Shown: piece after piece, positions 3,461 through 56,879 of the stretch
How positions within the stretch are numbered: position 1 is the first letter of the stretch
Layout: every line of letters starts with the position of its first letter
NCBI GenBank assembly: GCA_976226885.1
Contig: OZ320316.1
Coordinates: 97,402,001-97,466,000, forward strand
Direction of reading: 5' to 3'
Origin: Iphione sp. A-MEVVRFRX5
Lineage: Eukaryota
DNA: 64,000 nt
Program-made: the position numbers and the translations under genes
The notes under the pieces: generated by a model
What the model saw: the letters and a program-made list of their open reading frames with translations, nothing else
Told to the model about the DNA's origin: nothing
Databases searched by the model: none

Positions 3461-3770
3461 CCGTGCTGTCAGCTTCCGGGAAGCGCGTGCCTCCATATCT
3501 CACCACCAGGGGCGTGGCCGTGGCCGTGGTGGCGGGCAGCGGTGCGTTGTAACCCGTAGCAGACGGGGCCGCTGCAGCTCCAGCCGCCGATGTGTTTCGC
3601 CCACCCCACGTGACGTGCATGCCGTACATGCTGATGTTGTGTTGACGCATCTGGCGTGTGACGTCACGGATGGTTTCCTTGGCGACGGTGCGGAACCAGA
3701 CGCAGAGGTTGGTGGCGACCATGTGGGTGAGGCCGAACCGGGCGAAGGTGCGATACTTGTGGATGCACAT
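3461..3770 (-). CDS. OTOP: OTOP coding exon 7 (TM5 and start of extracellular loop: MCIHKYRTFARFGLTHMVATNLCVWFRTVAKET...EADST)
   Basis: Acceptor tttgttttctccccag|ATG and donor CGG|gtgagt (phase 1). Motif RFGL.H..ATNLCVW...ET. N-glycosylation sequons NIS and NTS in the following loop. A weaker alternative donor GTG|gtgaga lies upstream. Confidence 0.93.
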
Positions 3771-6700
3771 CTGGGGAGAAAACAAAGAGAAAGAAATGGT
3801 AAACACGCTGTGACTGTCCCTTCTGGGGATAAGGGGATGAGGGGGGAGGGGGCTTATTCAAGATTAACACCCATGGGACTGTTGGCGAGGGACAATGAGT
3901 TAGGGCAAGCAAAAAGGGTGCNNNNNNNNNNNNNNNNNNNNNNNNNNNNNNNNNNNNNNNNNNNNNNNNNNNNNNNNNNNNNNNNNNNNNNNNNNNNNNN
4001 NNNNNNNNNNNNNNNNNNNNNNNNNNNNNNNNNNNNNNNNNNNNNNNNNNNNNNNNNNNNNNNNNNNNNNNNNATAGAGAGCGAGAGACAGACAGACAGA
4101 CGGACGGATGGAAGGAAAGAGACGAAAGAAAAAAATGAGGAAGCAAGAGAGAAGACTAAGGTTAGCGGGAAGAGGGAATATAAAAAGACGTGGAGGACAG
4201 TAGAAGCACAGATAGAAATGCGAGAGGATAGACTAGAACGCGGGGCAGTGGGCTGAAGGTAGGCTGAAGAACAAACATAGTTGTTAGAAAGAGACGGACG
4301 GACACACAGACAGACAGGCAGGCAGGGAGAAAAGGACGCCGGCCAGACAAAGGGAAATTTCCCCATGAATCCGAATATCATACCGTATTGAATTATCTTC
4401 ATATGAAAACAACGGATTGGTTTTCAAACAAATATAGCCACTTCTTGTCTTCAAAGGGACAGCCTCCCGTCAGCAGCAGCATCGATTTTTTTGCCTTTAA
4501 TCTTTAAGGGCGATATCCACAATTTCAAAAGGACGAACAACACAGCGACACAAATGTGGCACATCAAAGTTAAGTACGGCTATCGATCGGAAGCGACAAA
4601 AAACCAACTAATTTCTTTCATCCCTCTTATTAGATCGACCGTCATGGTTTCGCCATCTTCCTTTTCAATATTGAGCCTCGTTTTCATCGCCGGAAGTCAA
4701 TGGCTGCAAGAATGTGAGCAGCAGCAGCTGTACCAATGCATTCGTGGACAGAGCAGTGATATGGTACCTAAACAGGGCCGGGCGGGCAGGAGGGAGAAGG
4801 GAGCGAGGGAGAAGTGAAGAGATGGAGAACAAAAGAAGCAATAAGATAAATAAAAGGGAAGGGAATAGGAAAAACAGAGTGGAGGATTGACTGAGGGCGA
4901 CTGGCGAGAAAGGGAGGGAAAAGAGAGTATACGGGAGGAGAAAGACCCAGGCAGAGAGAGAGGGCGCAGACAGGAGAAAGAGAAGGAGCAAGGAGTGTTG
5001 AAAAAAATGGGAGAAGAGTGATCCAGTCAGGAATTAAATAAGAGAAAACAAGGACAGGAGAAGTGAGACGAGCCCCAGTGAATGGAGCATACGTGAAGGG
5101 AGCCTGAAGAGAATGGGAAGAAGAGTGAAGAGTCGAGAATGAGGAAGCTCTGGCGGCTTTGTCAAGAGCTGACGCCCCTCTCTGTCTGGCTGCATTGAAA
5201 TCATTTCGGACAACGTGAATATAGACGGAAACCGTGCACACAATAGGCATTTCCACAGCCATCCCCGCCACCTACTCAAGAGCATACAATCCGCAATGAT
5301 GCGAGGGGGACTCGTAAAAAAAACAGACGGAGACACCCTAGATACCGTTACCAATGCATCATTACTGAAATAAAGTGTTTTCCCTTGACAACCTTTTTGC
5401 CCCCTTCACAGCCAACAGTTACTCCCTGATTGGACACGACAAAGGAGGTCCGATTTACTACCAGACTGCCAGGGGGCGCGGCTGCCATGTCTGGCAACAG
5501 TACTCTTTACTGATGTAACCTCTCCTGCGAGTTGCTAGCATTACATGTGTATACATATATAAATATATTCCTTTTTCTATATGTGCAGGCATAGATCATC
5601 AGATAATCATATTGGAAAAAGCATGGACTTAAATCTGACTTTAAATAAAAATACAAATACTCTGATGCAATGTCTGAAATCATTTACTGTTTGTGTGAGT
5701 TAGAGGAAGCAAAAGGGGTGAACAAGGACATTACCCAAAGGACGCCAGACAACAAAGTGCGGGAAAAGAGTCTGACAGTAAAAAAGAGAGAGAGATACAT
5801 CCTTACATAAATACATGGCCAGATGACCTCAGGATTACAGTGCGTATAACACGAGTCTGTATCTCAAAAGGAGTTATAGCCCAACAGTGGAGGTTCTGAT
5901 GCCACAGCTGTCCTTTGTCTAAGTTTCTATTACTCCTATATCTCTCTATATGGATACACATTTGGATCACAACATGGTTATACCACATATACGTCCTATG
6001 GGACCACAGATTGTAAAACTACAAGTCTGCAAAACTGCAAGTCTTTGATATATCATGTCTGAAATTATCTTTCAGGGTTTATATGTGATTTCTTGCTCCG
6101 AGTAGTTAATTTTCACGATGTATAGTTGGATCCCTTTTAAGAGACCACAGTTTTGTTTTTAAACATGACTCAAGGACCGTCTAACCAGGGTGTAAACACC
6201 TACCTCTATGGGTAAGGCAGATTGCAAAAACAAGTTGAATAAGGCGTGGTATATTGAGAGCAAACAACATAGGATTATACCTCTCGCAGGGCGAAAAAAA
6301 AAATCCCTCACTTAACACAAACCTTACTGAGTTACCTGGGTAAATCTAAACATGATACAGACACAAGTCTGTTGGGGCCGACAAACACTGCTCACCTGTC
6401 CCAGGTCCTCACCTGGTCACGTTACCCGTCAGGTAGGTCTTGACTGCAGAGAATCCGCTACCTCGTACAAAACCTAGTTGTCAGAGGCATACACGCACAC
6501 GCGAATAAAAAAAGAATGGAGAAAGAGAGAAAGGACTCTTCAACAGGACGCCAATGGGTTATGGATTTCATTACTTAGGACGAGAGGCTTCTCACATGAC
6601 TCTGTTTTGTTTTCCAACCAAATGTCGCGGACGGGATGTAAGAATGACCATCCAGGCCTTTATCATTACCACCGACCTTCGGTAAGGCGGGCAAGTCCTT

Positions 6701-9700: not shown

Positions 9701-10008
9701 ATACTTTTGGGAAGAACAAATTTTATTTTGCTTGTTATAGCAAGTCTCAAACAGGAATATGTCTCAATGAGGGACTGTTTAGCAAAGAATCATGGATGCC
9801 CCAGTCACAGGATTTTCACCGTACATACCAAAACCAGATGGAGGGGGAAATAAACTTGACTTTAAATGAGGTATTAGGGGGCCTTACCCGAGACCAGGGA
9901 AGAAGACTGCTCTACACCCACTGCCTTTGTATTATACATACTCACTGCCCTTAAAGAAACAGTGGACGCCAGAGAACGACAAAGAGTAAGCAGCGACCTT
10001 TGACTCAC

Positions 10009-10169
10009 CTTGGAATTGAGGAAGATGAAGTAAAGTTGGATGAAGGTAAAGGCCAGGTGAAGGACAGGTCGAATTGCTTCGGTGACCTTGACACAGGGTG
10101 AGGTCAACTCAAACTCGAACAGCTCTCCAAACATGAGCCCCTCATGGATCATGGCACCAATACCGAAGG
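10009..10169 (-). CDS. OTOP: OTOP coding exon 6 (TM3-TM4: AFGIGAMIHEGLMFGE...LHLAFTFIQLYFIFLNSK)
   Basis: Acceptor tcttctttcag|CC and donor AAG|gtgagt. 161 nt with otopetrin motifs FGIG.MI and FTF.Q.YFIFLN. Confidence 0.95.
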
Positions 10170-10914
10170 CTGAAAGAAGAGACATACTGGATAAACACAG
10201 AGGCATGTGACTCCCGGACAATATATGGATGATTTTTTTTTATTTCTTTTGCTGTACCACAGGTGACTCCATTCCACTCCCTCTCTGTCATCTGTACACA
10301 TCTATTATAATGAGGACAATAATAACAATAATGATAATAACAACAATAATATAAATCAGAATAATTACCGCATTCATATGAGAATGACATGACACCTGAT
10401 AAGCCCAGATGGTCGAAGCCCTGTTGTAAAGCACCCGAATTCATATACTTCCGACAAAAGAGAAAAACTCTCTCCCTCTAAAATATTTTCCTGCATTGTA
10501 GTAGCTCTGTTATAAGAAATCTGGAGAAACTCTTCTTTCAACAAACAGGGTACTTCTCTCCATAGCTACACACACAGGGGACATGACAACCACATTCCGG
10601 TGGACCTGACAGGGCAATACCTTTTCTCTGAACAGCTGCATTTTGCGTTTTCTTGTCAGAATAGTTACCAAGGTGGGTTTGGAATTACAATACTAATCAT
10701 AATGATAGTTAAAATACATGGGTGGGGATGAGAGTTACTGTGGCTTGTGATATTGACCACGATGACAGGTAAAATCTCTGTATGACAAGAGTATGGACCT
10801 GCGAGATCTATTGTCCCCCACCGCCAAGCGCCCATTTCATGTTTGACTGCCTGCAGGGCGGGACCCAAGCTCAGTCTGTCTAGGGGGATGGCGGGTGAGG
10901 GGTTTTGGCTCCCT

Positions 10915-45999: not shown

Positions 46000-46833
46000 C
46001 TGGAAAATTAAGAATGAAGCAGAGGGTTAGATGAGATAAGGTGAGATAAGGGAGAAAGGACGAATGTGTGATGAAGGAGAACATGGGAGACAGAATATTA
46101 ACAGTCAACAGTCAGTTGAGGGAGAGCAAGTGAGTTTTAGGTAAGTTATAGCGTTGACGGTCACAGGAGAGATGAAGGAGAGAGGGTGAGATAAAAACGT
46201 GGTTAGTTATAGGTAGGATATGGCAGGGTGAGGGGTGGATAGTAACAGATGCAGTGAGGTATTAGGAGTCATGTTAGTAAAGGGCTAGAGGGGTGGGTAT
46301 AACTATGATAAGTGAGAGCGAGTGAGTTAGAGGTAGGTCACAAATACAGCCCTGTGACAAGAGGAACGACAATTCTGATTATAAATACACATATATACAA
46401 GTTTATCACAAATACAAACTTTACTGTGTAGCATTCTACATGCATAACGTAAGCTTTAATCCACAGTCCTTTTCCTTATATTAAAAGTCTTCCTTTATAT
46501 AACGTGTGGTTATGATTATAAGCCCTGTTGAACTTATAATTATAACTCCTACTGAACATAACTATACAAAACGTAAAATCTCTACTCAATACAACCCTGC
46601 ATGTTGTACTAATTACCACTGTTTACACAATTCTTTAGGTAAAATGATAAAGTTAACAGGATCTAGCTTTGGGTTATAATAATCTCTACTCTATATAAAC
46701 ATGTCAATCAGCAAGTACGTGTACTATAAATAAACCAAGGAGTAGCTAGGTTAGAGATCCATATTAGGAATCACACCAGGGTTGCGGTTGAGGGTTGAAG
46801 TACCATGAGCAGGCCTTCCTCCTGGGGCCATAC

Positions 46834-47531
46834 TTGAGGTTAAGAGTAGGGAAGTCTTCCACTTTGATCTTCCAGTGTTCGTCCTCCAGTAACCTCCTCT
46901 GTCTCTCCTGTTCCTGCTCCTCCTCCTCCTCCCGTTCTCTCCTCTCCTGCCCCTCCTCTTGTTCTTCTACTCCGCTGTACTGCCTTAGGTTCCTCCCGTC
47001 CGGTCCCTCTGTGCTGCTGTTGCTACTGTTGCTGGTGGTGTAGTGATGTACTTGTATTGCGTTCCTTCCCTGGGGCTGGTGTCCGCCTCCTCGAAGACAG
47101 AGCTGGCCTTCACTCCTTTCCTGTTGCCTGTCCCTTCCGTCCAGATGATCGCTTCTTCTGTCATTCTGGCCTTTATTCCTGTCTCCCTGTTCTTCTCCCC
47201 TGCTCTTGTTCACATCCTGCCTGTACCTCCCACCTCTCTTCTGGTACCCTGCACTGCTCTCCTGGTGCCTCGCACCTCCCTCCGGGTAACCTGCAGCTCT
47301 CTCCTGGTACCCTGCACCTCTCTCCTGATGCCCTGCACCTCTCTCCGGGTACTCTTCCTGCATACACTCTGGCCCTCCTATTCCGTCCACTGTAATATCT
47401 CCACTATATTCCTCCCCCTCTTTGCTGCTGATGCCTTCCTCCTCTTCCTGGGGGTCCGCCTCTGCCGCGTGCTGGCCCAGCTTGCCCATGGGAACCATCT
47501 CCACGCTCTCATCCACCCCAATGATCGTCAT
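46834..47531 (-). CDS. OTOP: OTOP coding exon 1 (start codon; disordered N-terminus). 3' end ambiguous: 46834, 46804 or 46777
   Basis: ATG at 47531 in CACCATG context with an in-frame TGA 9 nt upstream. Long open frame MTIIGVDESVEMVPMG...EDFPTLNLK. All three GT dinucleotides between 46860 and the stop are phase 2, which matches the next exon. Linked to OTOP by strand, phase and position, not by sequence homology. Confidence 0.7.
47213..47359 (-). repeat. 21-bp coding tandem repeat (~7 units; ERGAG(H/Y)Q-type heptads) in OTOP exon 1
   Basis: Plus-strand units such as ctctcttctggtaccctgcac and ctctctcctggtaccctgcac at an exact 21-bp period (47234, 47255, 47276, 47297, 47318, 47339), plus a degenerate unit at 47213. 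Confidence 0.85.
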
Positions 47532-55063: not shown

Positions 55064-55776
55064 GCGATGCAGAAATGCACAGCAGTGAGAACCATATCGC
55101 CCAGCACCCCAGTAACCTCCTTGACAACACCCCCCCCCCACTCACTACCCCGATCATCCGCCCCCCAACCCCCACCCAGCCACCTCCTGCCCGTGATGGC
55201 GGGGATCAAATGTGAATTACATTATTTCATTTGGCAGGTTTTCTATTATCAACTTACGCGCTGGGGTAGCAAGAGTGATTAATTAGATAGAAGAGTAAAA
55301 ACAACACGGGAAACCGAGGCAGACGAGAAGAGAGAAGAAATGAGAGGCGATCCCGCAATGAAAGAAAACTCATGTACAGGGCAGACGGAAATTTTCGTAT
55401 ACATGTAGTTCTGATTGTTGCATTACACTTGGTGTCATACTGAACTTATAACCCGAAAACTCCAATATTGCAGCGGTATTAGACTAGGAAGACTGAGAAC
55501 CACCATCACCACAAATTATGGGCAAGTATGCCAGTTTAGTGCAATCTGAGTGTATTGCTAAGAGGAGAAATGCAAGAAACAAATTGCAGAAAAAACCTGG
55601 AACGTTACATGATCCATTGCAAGGAAATAATGGCTGAACAAGTATTAATAACCTTACTAGCCACACGTGATGTGAGTAATATCACCCAATCTGGGAAAAT
55701 AAATACATGCAAACATATATACGCTTCAGCATGACAGAGGAATTGATGCAAACAATATAATTGACGCAACTCTACG

Positions 55777-55923
55777 CTATCGTTCTATCACACAACTGCC
55801 TGACGAAGGCCCGTAAGAGGGCCGAAAGCTCGCGAAAGTTGTACTTGGTTATATGTTGATTAAAGCCACCCTGTTGTTGGAATTCGGTGTCAGTCATCTT
55901 TTCCTCTAGTTCTATCGTTCTAT
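55777..55923 (+). mobile_element. 123-bp ribozyme-bearing insertion (solo PLE pseudo-LTR or monomeric retrozyme) with 12-bp target-site duplication
   Basis: Exact direct repeat CTATCGTTCTAT at 55777-55788 and 55912-55923 brackets 55789-55911. The insert holds the hammerhead followed by ATTAAA (55859-55864). Confidence 0.7.
55792..55842 (+). ncRNA. Minimal type I hammerhead ribozyme (Penelope-like element / retrozyme type)
   Basis: Sequence acaact-gc-CTGACGA-a-GGCCC-gtaaga-GGGCC-GAA-AGCT-C^gc-gaa-agttgt. Intact core (CUGANGA 55800-55806; GAAA 55824-55827), perfect 5-bp stem II, palindromic AGCU in place of stem III, stem I of 2+6 bp with a 3-nt bulge. Predicted cleavage after C55831. Confidence 0.85.
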
Positions 55924-56879
55924 TAATTCGCACAGTTACTTATTTATAGAGCCGAAGTGTCATCACAAGTGATGATACTGCTAATTTCACAGAAATGAAA
56001 TCCCTCCAATTTTCACCACACTTCTACGCTAAATAGAAGCATCTTATTTCACCGGGTGATGGATATCTAAGCCAGTGTAGTTAGTATCCCTTCTTTCATC
56101 ATTTCTCCCCGGATTGCCTCACAAACATAAAGTGATAGTCAAGATCATACAAAACTAAAACTGAGACATCGTAAATTCCCTATATGTGATGATAACTGAC
56201 GAGTTGTATTATGCAACTGCCGTCTATTACAAGAGAAATATTGAACAGCTTTGTAAAAAAAAAACCTTTAAATATACATATATTTCCATTTCAGAATTCG
56301 AACTCAGAAAGTGTTAAAACCCAAAGACTAGGTATCTTCAACGGAATGACATGCTTGAAGCTATGGAATCCTACGAGCGTCAAAATATATGTCTATTTTC
56401 AAAGTCATGCAATGACCGTTAGATGACCCTGACTAGGAAAATGCACGGAAATGATTGAAACACTAAATTGACAAATCTACTTTCAATTATACAAGCATCA
56501 ACGGGGTATGAATCTGGAGCCTGAAATGGAGCCACACCGAAAACTGTCTCTGCTTTGAACTTAATTTCATTACTGTGAGGAGATGGGTACTAAACACAAC
56601 GTATCCTGCATCAACACTACCTCCTCCCTACTTCAAACAGCACAGCAGATGCCGGGTGTGTATCTCCCTAACCCTATCCCCCATCTCCTCTACTACTACG
56701 GGAGTGGGGTTGGGTGGGGGTTGGGTGGGGGGAGAGATAGGCTGCTAAAGTGTATAATGAGCCGGTCAATGAGAGTGGGCGTGGCCACACCTATCAATCA
56801 CTCACGTGACCTCCCCAGGGGTGTGGGTGTATGACCGCCACAGCTCTTTACAATGCAGCCTCACTGTCACTAACCGGAC

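What the first reader, a model, noticed from the sequence alone, without database searches (positions are those of the whole stretch)
55777..55923. Self-contained 123-bp hammerhead-ribozyme insertion with a 12-bp target-site duplication
SEEN: an intact hammerhead core on + (CTGACGA...GAAA), a perfect 5-bp GC stem II with a GUAAGA loop, an extra A between the core and stem II, the palindrome AGCU instead of a real stem III, and a bulged 8-bp stem I (acaact-gc / gc-gaa-agttgt). ATTAAA follows. The whole unit sits between two exact copies of CTATCGTTCTAT, and the insert starts only 3 nt before stem I. KNOWN: minimal type I hammerheads with palindromic stem III remnants mark Penelope-like retroelement pseudo-LTRs and metazoan non-LTR retrozymes, and they cleave as dimers. 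INFERENCE: this is about the smallest mobile unit that still keeps an intact ribozyme. As a single copy it could only cleave by pairing in trans with another transcript. It lies ~8 kb upstream of and antisense to OTOP, and may mark an undescribed family of very small ribozyme retroelements in this genome.
Basis: partly seen in the sequence, partly recalled or inferred. Interest (0 to 1): 0.85.

Follow-up and report, generated by a model that had tools for sequence, protein, structure and literature searches.

The report
Truncated Penelope retrotransposon copy with hammerhead
The 123-bp insert is real, but it is a dead-end leader-only retrocopy of an active 5.2-kb Penelope-like jumping gene that carries the usual small hammerhead ribozyme, not a new kind of tiny mobile element.

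Summary
Window 55792-55842 (+) has a complete minimal type I hammerhead core. The 123-bp insert (55789-55911) sits between two exact copies of CTATCGTTCTAT, the only two in the window.

The insert is the last ~122 bp of the 459-bp pseudo-LTR of a ~5.2-kb Penelope-like element (PLE) in this genome, which has a 786-aa RT + GIY-YIG ORF and 99% identical pLTR pairs. The hammerhead, with its unpaired A before stem II and palindromic AGCU in place of helix III, is the published PLE "min-HHR".

At least 22 such "minis" exist in this family, and more in other PLE families here. Most have their own 9-16-bp target-site duplications. Their 5' ends cluster within about 8 nt, 29-36 nt downstream of a conserved TATA box that the inserts lack. 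Their 3' ends lie at the element's usual 3' junction.

Each mini is closest to a different full-length subfamily, and none is tandem. They are therefore repeated by-products, not a self-propagating lineage. The best reading is reverse transcription that starts at the 5' pLTR/body junction and runs off the mRNA 5' end.

The nearest Otopetrin-domain exon is 45.6 kb away, not 8 kb. This scan had already noted Penelope hammerheads (split variants) on other DNA of this genome.

The parts
55777..55788 (+). Upstream copy of the 12-bp target-site duplication CTATCGTTCTAT
   Evidence: Exact 12-mer, one of only two copies in the window, 0 expected. The flanks are unique in the genome.
55789..55790 (+). 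Two filler bases (CA) at the 5' junction, not matching the parent pLTR (which has AC here)
   Evidence: Alignment to the full-length copies starts at 55791. Similar 1-5-nt fillers occur at other 5' junctions, for example the full-length copy L033 and the short copy L087.
55791..55911 (+). PLE-derived segment. It corresponds to positions 338 to about 458 of the 459-bp pseudo-LTR, that is from the predicted transcription start to the element's 3' junction.
   Evidence: 97.5-99.2% identical to the pLTRs of full-length elements. There are 0 differences to L002/L003/L007 over the central 102 alignment columns. No other part of the element is in the window.
55792..55842 (+). Minimal type I hammerhead ribozyme motif: stem I, core, an unpaired A, a 5-bp stem II, and AGCU in place of helix III. 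Predicted cleavage is after C55831.
   Evidence: Sequence reading. The monomer MFE keeps stems I and II. Across 21 varied copies from this genome, all 5 stem II pairs covary and 94% of cells pair, against 17-46% overall in the slid controls. The architecture matches the PLE min-HHR of PMC4209133.
55859..55864 (+). ATTAAA hexamer, a possible poly(A)-type signal, conserved in the family
   Evidence: Present in nearly all of the 54 aligned copies. Its function was not tested.
55912..55923 (+). Downstream copy of the 12-bp target-site duplication. Its first 4 nt (CTAT) also match the element's own continuation, and 9 of 11 nt resemble the element sequence that follows the 5' pLTR.
   Evidence: BLAST to 5' pLTR copies runs on to 55923, whereas BLAST to 3' pLTR copies stops at 55912-14.

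Best explanation
The insert is a dead-on-arrival retrocopy of the 5' leader of a Penelope-like element (PLE) mRNA. The parent is a ~5.2-kb element with 459-bp direct pseudo-LTRs and a 786-aa RT + GIY-YIG ORF. Each pLTR contains a CCAAT-like box and a TATA box. About 33 nt further on comes the hammerhead, then ATTAAA, and then the site where all copies of the family end (CTAGTTC plus 0-4 nt).

Shown: the window piece equals pLTR positions 338 to about 458, has a 12-bp target-site duplication, and is nearly identical to active-looking full-length copies.

Inferred: the element's RT/endonuclease nicked the target. The nicked DNA end paired by 4 nt (CTAT) with the RNA at the 5' pLTR/body junction. 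Reverse transcription started there, inside the RNA, as shown in vitro for another PLE (PMC11167929). It ran off the 5' end of the mRNA after ~122 nt, two extra bases were added, and the short cDNA was fixed with a 12-bp duplication.

The copy has no promoter and no ORF. Its single hammerhead lacks helix III, so it could cut only when paired with a second copy. Here it is most likely inert.
For: Copies of the unit pair up 4.70-4.73 kb apart. These are 459-bp direct repeats, 99.1-99.6% identical, around an ORF with RVT_1 and GIY-YIG. Two of the three full-length copies examined keep the 786-aa ORF. Full-length L033 has a 12-bp TSD and 5 filler bases.

The exact hammerhead 33-mer has 54 hits in the genome against 0 in the control, and 12 of these are minis. 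A search with a downstream 31-mer, independent of the hammerhead, gave 78 hits and added 10 more minis. Of about 31 copies shorter than a pLTR, 22 start at pLTR positions 324-348, nearly all at 334-348. The rest scatter at 54, 149, 155, 155, 192, 267, 357, 380 and 381. Sixteen of the 22 minis have a direct repeat of 7 bp or more at their ends, and 13 of these are clear 9-16-bp TSDs.

A TATA box lies 38-42 nt before CTGA in at least 5 diverged PLE families, so the mini 5' ends fall 29-36 nt after it. Minis of other families start at the same spot and have TSDs of 8-16 bp.

The starts of the TSDs match the body sequence that follows the 5' pLTR by 0-4 nt (4, 4, 4, 3, 2, 2, 1, 1, 0). About 0.3 nt would be expected by chance, so the template RNA ran on into the body.

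From the literature: internal initiation of reverse transcription, and a hammerhead not needed for insertion (PMC11167929); a transcription start inside the pLTR of Penelope (PMC8557442).
Against: No RNA data were available, so the transcription start is only predicted from the TATA spacing. Full-length copies carry a complete 459-bp 5' pLTR, including 337 bp upstream of that predicted start, and the simple model does not explain this. [quoted passage not shown] A structure-induced stop of the RT at the 5' edge of the hammerhead cannot be excluded. No empty site could be found for the window insert or for two other minis.
Confidence: 0.78

Rival explanations
1. Ordinary 5' truncation. The RT began at the normal 3' end of a long element RNA and fell off early, and the 5' edge of the folded hammerhead acted as a hot spot. 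The 5' end would then not be a transcript end.
For: PLE insertions are known for a high degree of 5' truncation (PMC8557442). Other truncation points exist in this family at pLTR positions 54, 149, 155, 192, 267, 357, 361 and 380.
Against: Twenty-two of about 31 short copies start within a few nt of each other. The same boundary recurs in families whose stem I sequence differs. It coincides with TATA +29-36 in at least 5 families. An RT copying 3' to 5' would be expected to stall before a structure, not just after crossing it. Microhomology to body sequence points to the 5' pLTR junction as the template.
Confidence: 0.13
2. One reading: an independent, non-autonomous family of very small ribozyme retroelements (retrozyme- or SINE-like). 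It would be transcribed from its own copies and mobilised in trans by PLE proteins.
For: There are many dispersed copies with different TSDs. A 2026 preprint argues that animal retrozymes derive from PLE pLTRs and include monomeric copies (10.64898/2026.07.22.740005).
Against: The TATA box is outside the insert. Each mini is 0-3 differences from a full-length pLTR of one of at least 3-4 subfamilies, and in 11 of 12 cases it is no closer to another mini than to that pLTR. No two listed hits lie closer than about 4 kb on the same strand, so there are no tandem arrays. The flanks of the window copy are unique.
Confidence: 0.06
3. A solo LTR left by recombination between the two pLTRs, or a chance hammerhead-like motif.
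For: The sequence is pLTR-derived.
Against: Only 121 of 459 bp are present, and they are flanked directly by a TSD, so this is not a solo pLTR. The motif has 0.03 chance matches per window and 160 genome hits against 2 in the control.
Confidence: 0.01

Closest known systems
Minimal hammerhead ribozymes (min-HHR) in the pseudo-LTRs of Penelope-like elements (Cervera & De la Pena 2014, PMC4209133)
   Same: Type I topology and a full catalytic core. Helix III is reduced to a palindrome, so activity is expected only as a dimer. [quoted passage not shown] The motif lies in both pLTRs of an RT + GIY-YIG element. Most genomic copies are single motifs in truncated elements.
   Different: Nothing essential for the ribozyme. 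Here stem II is 5 bp with a 6-nt loop, and stem I is 2 + 6 bp with a GAA bulge. That paper does not describe a discrete class of leader-only copies.
Metazoan non-LTR retrozymes (Cervera & de la Pena 2020, PMC7229834; Li et al. 2026 preprint)
   Same: Small, non-coding, hammerhead-bearing units related to PLE pLTRs, with TSDs longer than 4 bp where present. Monomeric copies are reported.
   Different: Retrozymes are defined by tandem repeats of 150-450 bp that give circular RNAs, and they mostly carry canonical type I hammerheads with loop-loop contacts. This unit is single and 123 bp, carries a min-HHR, and shows no lineage of its own.
Internal initiation of reverse transcription and the 'tail' of PLE insertions (Frangieh et al. 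2024, PMC11167929)
   Same: Copies end at a narrow set of sites inside sequence that continues in the RNA. The hammerhead cut site is not the usual end of the copies.
   Different: Here the variable extension is only 0-4 nt rather than 30-40 bp. The junctions show 0-4 nt of microhomology with the target, which the in vitro study did not see.
5'-truncated 'dead-on-arrival' LINE copies and retroviral minus-strand strong-stop DNA (comparison from general knowledge)
   Same: A cDNA that ends where the RNA template ends, or where the RT stops, giving a non-functional short copy with a TSD.
   Different: Here initiation would be near the 5' end of the mRNA, because the initiation site is duplicated in the 5' pLTR. 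The product therefore has a fixed length of about 122 nt.

Membership tests
Hammerhead ribozyme, type I (minimal PLE variant) | Conserved core: C3 U4 G5 A6 N7 G8 A9, G12 A13 A14, A15.1/U16.1, and H17 at the cut site | tested here: met
   CTGACGA ... GAAA-GC-TC at 55800-55831. These columns are invariant in 21 varied copies.
Hammerhead ribozyme, type I (minimal PLE variant) | Stem II kept by base pairing across relatives | tested here: met
   All 5 pairs show changes on both sides and 94.3% of cells pair. The whole 7-pair structure scores 89.8% paired, against 17-46% in the slid controls, and 0 of 500 shuffles reach the observed covariation score. The 20 extra copies were picked by eye for variety from the 160 hits.
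Hammerhead ribozyme, type I (minimal PLE variant) | Stem I closes the motif, with the 5' and 3' ends in stem I | tested here: met
   ACAACT/AGTTGT plus GC/GC here. Other families have ATATGGT/ACCATAT or CAC/GTG. In some families, such as L058/L072, no distal stem I was seen near by.
Hammerhead ribozyme, type I (minimal PLE variant) | Match to the curated Rfam hammerhead models | tested here: not met
   No match at gathering score over the whole window, and none at E<=10 over 55700-56000. My inference, not tested here, is that the Rfam models expect a closed helix III, which min-HHRs lack.
Hammerhead ribozyme, type I (minimal PLE variant) | Self-cleavage in Mg2+ as monomer or dimer | not testable with these tools
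   Needs in vitro transcription. Published PLE min-HHRs cut poorly in vitro (PMC4209133), and one needed its protein (PMC11167929).
Penelope-like element (EN+ canonical) | A single ORF with RT followed by a C-terminal GIY-YIG endonuclease | tested here: met
   Parent copy L033 2000-4360: RVT_1 E = 1.9e-08 and GIY-YIG E = 3.5e-05, both above the Pfam cut-offs. The best named relatives are uncharacterised bivalve, salamander and amphioxus proteins with the same Pfam domain set. The window itself holds none of the ORF.
Penelope-like element (EN+ canonical) | Pseudo-LTRs, direct or inverted, that carry the hammerhead | tested here: met
   459-bp direct repeats in L031-L033. A head-to-head pair lies at C13:54.10 Mb, and an inverted junction is seen in L088.
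Penelope-like element (EN+ canonical) | TPRT-type insertion with TSDs of variable length and frequent 5' truncation | tested here: met
   TSDs of 7-16 bp at 20 or more junctions and many truncated copies.
Metazoan non-LTR retrozyme | Head-to-tail tandem repeats, dimers to multimers, of a 150-450-bp unit | tested here: not met
   No two listed hits of the three genome-wide patterns lie closer than about 4 kb on one strand. The unit is 123 bp and single.
Metazoan non-LTR retrozyme | Expression as unit-length linear and circular RNA | not testable with these tools
   No transcript data were available.
SINE-like autonomous transcription unit | A promoter carried inside the copied unit | tested here: inconclusive
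   The only promoter-like signal seen, the TATA box, is 33 nt outside the insert. An internal promoter was not tested.

The most novel reading that the evidence does not exclude
The ~122-bp minis may be integrated 'run-off' cDNAs made when the PLE reverse transcriptase starts at the upstream copy of its internal initiation site, the 5' pLTR/body junction. If so, their two ends mark both the transcription start and the initiation site of several PLE families without any RNA data. They would also show that the template needs nothing upstream of the hammerhead-bearing leader. They could also be the raw material from which tandem retrozymes arise.
Probability: 0.45. Interest if true: 0.5.

Novelty: new member of a known kind. 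Interest (0 to 1): 0.3.

Why it matters
For the window it matters little. This is a young, probably neutral fragment of a known kind of retrotransposon, lying in unique intergenic DNA.

For PLE biology the pattern behind it is modestly useful. The discrete, TSD-flanked leader-only copies recur in several families. [quoted passage not shown] It also places a likely promoter and transcription start right at the 5' edge of the hammerhead. And it offers a simple genomic read-out of both ends of the reverse transcription step, in a class of elements whose mechanism is still poorly known. It also warns against counting single hammerhead hits as separate ribozyme retroelements.

Tried and rejected
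Rfam gave no hammerhead match over the whole window at gathering score or over 55700-56000 at E<=10, only two chance-level hits to other families.

Empty-site test: both flanks of the window insert are unique in the genome. The flank of mini L075 is unique. The flank of mini L040 matches only a short repeat that does not reach the insertion point. No paralogous empty site was found, and no related species is available in these tools.

RNAcofold of two copies did not choose the AGCU x AGCU helix III. It preferred another pairing, so thermodynamic folding neither supports nor refutes the dimer.

Pfam scans of nine ORFs between 44 and 61 kb of the window found nothing, so the gene context near the insert stays unknown.

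A solo-LTR origin, chance occurrence and a tandem retrozyme were considered and rejected (see the rival explanations).

Full report

- On the + strand, ACAACTGC (55792-99) is followed by CTGACGA, one unpaired A, and a perfect 5-bp GC stem (GGCCC / GGGCC) with loop GTAAGA.
- Then come GAAA and GCTC, with the predicted cut after C55831, then GC-GAA-AGTTGT closing stem I. ATTAAA lies at 55859-64.
- CTATCGTTCTAT occurs exactly twice in the window, at 55777-88 and 55912-23. None is expected by chance.
- The core pattern CTGANGA-N17-GAAAGCTC occurs once in the window, against 0.03 expected.
- No Rfam hammerhead model matches, at gathering score or at E<=10. My inference is that those models expect a closed helix III, which this variant lacks.

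**What it belongs to.** A search of the window's own genome (1.18 Gb) found at least 40 near-identical copies of the unit. Many sit in pairs 4.70-4.73 kb apart on the same strand.

- Three such pairs were fetched. Each is a 459-460-bp direct repeat, 99.1-99.6% identical. The repeats flank a 786-aa ORF with RVT_1 and GIY-YIG domains, both above the Pfam cut-offs.
- This is a canonical endonuclease-positive Penelope-like element (PLE) of about 5.19 kb (L033: 945-6133).
- Two of the three copies keep the full ORF. The closest named proteins elsewhere are uncharacterised bivalve, salamander and amphioxus proteins at about 40-44% identity.
- Full-length copy L033 has its own 12-bp target-site duplication, plus five filler bases at the 5' junction.
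- Within the pLTR, in order, are a CCAAT-like box, GGGTATAAAAGG, the sequence CACAAC 33 nt later (where the window insert begins), the hammerhead, ATTAAA, and CTAGTTC where the element ends.
- The window holds only pLTR positions 338 to about 458 and no other part of the element.

**The hammerhead.** Its features are those published for the minimal hammerheads of PLE pseudo-LTRs. [quoted passage not shown]

- In this genome the pattern CTGANGA-N17-GAAAGCTC, which leaves the 17 middle positions free, has 160 hits against 2 in the control.
- I fetched 20 hits with varied middle parts, picked by eye, and aligned them with the window copy.
- All five stem II pairs show compensatory changes and 94% of cells pair. 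The whole structure scores 89.8% paired against 17-46% in the slid controls, and no shuffle reaches the observed covariation score.
- The unpaired A is invariant.
- The motif is therefore a selected structure of the parent elements. Cleavage itself cannot be tested here.

**A class of leader-only copies.**

- Of 54 genomic hits to the exact hammerhead 33-mer (0 in the control), 14 continue into the element body as 5' pLTRs, 28 are 3' pLTRs, and 12 are minis that contain only pLTR positions ~334-348 to ~457-470.
- A second search used a 31-mer downstream of the hammerhead, so it does not depend on the ribozyme. It gave 78 hits and added 10 more minis.
- Among about 31 copies shorter than a pLTR, 22 start at positions 324-348, nearly all at 334-348. 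The others start at 54, 149, 155, 155, 192, 267, 357, 380 and 381.
- Sixteen of the 22 minis have a direct repeat of 7 bp or more at their ends. Thirteen of these are clear 9-16-bp duplications, all different.
- Minis of other PLE families (L059, L067, L071, L075, L076, L070/L074) start at the equivalent position. Four of these seven show duplications of 8-16 bp.
- A TATA box lies 38-42 nt before CTGA in at least five diverged families, so the mini 5' ends fall 29-36 nt after it.
- The TATA box itself is never part of a mini.

**Not a lineage of its own.** Over the shared 102 alignment columns, each of the 12 first-found minis is 0-3 differences from a full-length pLTR. These pLTRs belong to at least three or four subfamilies. 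In 11 of 12 cases the mini is no closer to another mini than to that pLTR. No hit listed in any of the three genome-wide pattern searches lies within about 4 kb of another on the same strand, so there are no tandem arrays. The minis therefore arise again and again from autonomous elements.

**The 3' junction.** Copies end anywhere from CTAG to CTAGTTCTAT. The first bases of each duplication tend to match the sequence that follows the 5' pLTR in the element body (TATACTT...). The matching runs are 4, 4, 4, 3, 2, 2, 1, 1 and 0 nt at nine clear junctions, where about 0.3 nt would be expected by chance. In the window the match is CTAT, and 9 of the 11 following positions also agree. This is why BLAST to 5' pLTR copies runs on to 55923. 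Because the upstream 12-mer is identical, including at the two positions that differ from the element, the 12-mer comes from the target. The junction is simply ambiguous by 4 nt. This microhomology implies that the template RNA continued into body sequence. In a genomic copy that happens only at the 5' pLTR/body junction.

**Mechanism.**

- Shown: the identity of the parent, the insert limits, the duplications, the clustering of 5' ends, and the TATA spacing.
- From the literature: a purified PLE protein initiates reverse transcription inside its RNA at defined sites; hammerhead mutants do not affect insertion (PMC11167929); the Penelope pLTR harbours the transcription start (PMC8557442).
- Inferred: element mRNA starts near CACAAC in the 5' pLTR. 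When the enzyme uses the initiation site at the 5' pLTR/body junction instead of a downstream one, the cDNA runs off the RNA end after ~122 nt. It is then integrated with a few filler bases and a 9-16-bp duplication.
- The product has no promoter and no ORF, and its lone hammerhead lacks helix III.
- Open points: there is no RNA evidence. The model does not explain why full-length copies carry a complete 5' pLTR. An RT stop at the edge of the folded ribozyme is a possible alternative, which I put at about 0.13.

**Context.** The flanks of the insert are unique in the genome. Otopetrin-domain exons lie on the minus strand at window 9991-10170 and 3636-3800, and further exons lie outside the window. 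The insert is thus antisense to the gene and upstream of it, but 45.6 kb from the first domain exon.

**Comparison and novelty.** The hammerhead-PLE link, single hammerheads in truncated PLEs, and the descent of retrozymes from pLTRs are all published (PMC4209133; PMC7229834; preprint 10.64898/2026.07.22.740005). Earlier notes of this scan had already reported Penelope hammerheads of a split type, and a zinc-finger second ORF, on other DNA of this genome. The window feature is therefore a new member of a known kind. The discrete leader-only class, with ends that coincide with a predicted transcription start and the reverse transcription start, is not mentioned in the papers I read. It is a modest, testable addition.

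Noticed in passing
L087 (G000:C1:45640878-45641908) and L097 (G000:C15:22934374-22935404): Two even shorter copies (about 84 bp and 74-80 bp, with TSDs of 13 and 14 bp) start at pLTR positions 380-381. This is 1-2 nt after the predicted hammerhead cut site (between 378 and 379). They could be copies of self-cleaved RNA. With n=2 and one ambiguous junction, this is only a hint.
   Followed up: partly
L033:4551-5579 (+), between the RT/GIY-YIG ORF and the 3' pLTR: The parent element has a further 342-aa ORF with a weak C2H2 zinc-finger match (E = 0.0036, below the Pfam cut-off). A 184-aa ORF at 1650-2204 overlaps the start of the RT ORF. Earlier notes of this scan mention a zinc-finger second gene in Penelope elements of this genome.
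   Followed up: partly
L101 (G000:C19:16071475-16072505), with L052 4.7 kb downstream: This copy's 5' pLTR starts only at position 361, inside the hammerhead, and then continues through the body. Its form is [partial leader]-body-pLTR, which is what a copy of an mRNA that started near the predicted transcription start would look like.
   Followed up: partly
L033:926-944 and the 5' junctions of L001, L087, L040, L103: The filler bases between the upstream TSD and the element often end in CA or contain it (tcgCA, CA, CA, CGCAac, CCA). This may be non-templated addition or slippage by the RT.
   Followed up: no
G000:C13:54099909-54105840 (L002/L007) and L088: Head-to-head (inverted) arrangements of 5'-truncated copies, as described for Penelope elements.
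   Followed up: no
window 46764-47531 (-): A 255-aa ATG ORF with no Pfam match, 8.3 kb from the insert. It may be an N-terminal exon of the Otopetrin gene or unrelated.
   Followed up: partly
L058, L067, L072, L076: In this related PLE family the hammerhead core and stem II are intact, but no complement to the stem I 5' strand (ACATCT) is seen in the 30 nt after the cut site. Stem I may be closed from further away, as in the split variants noted elsewhere in this genome.
   Followed up: no
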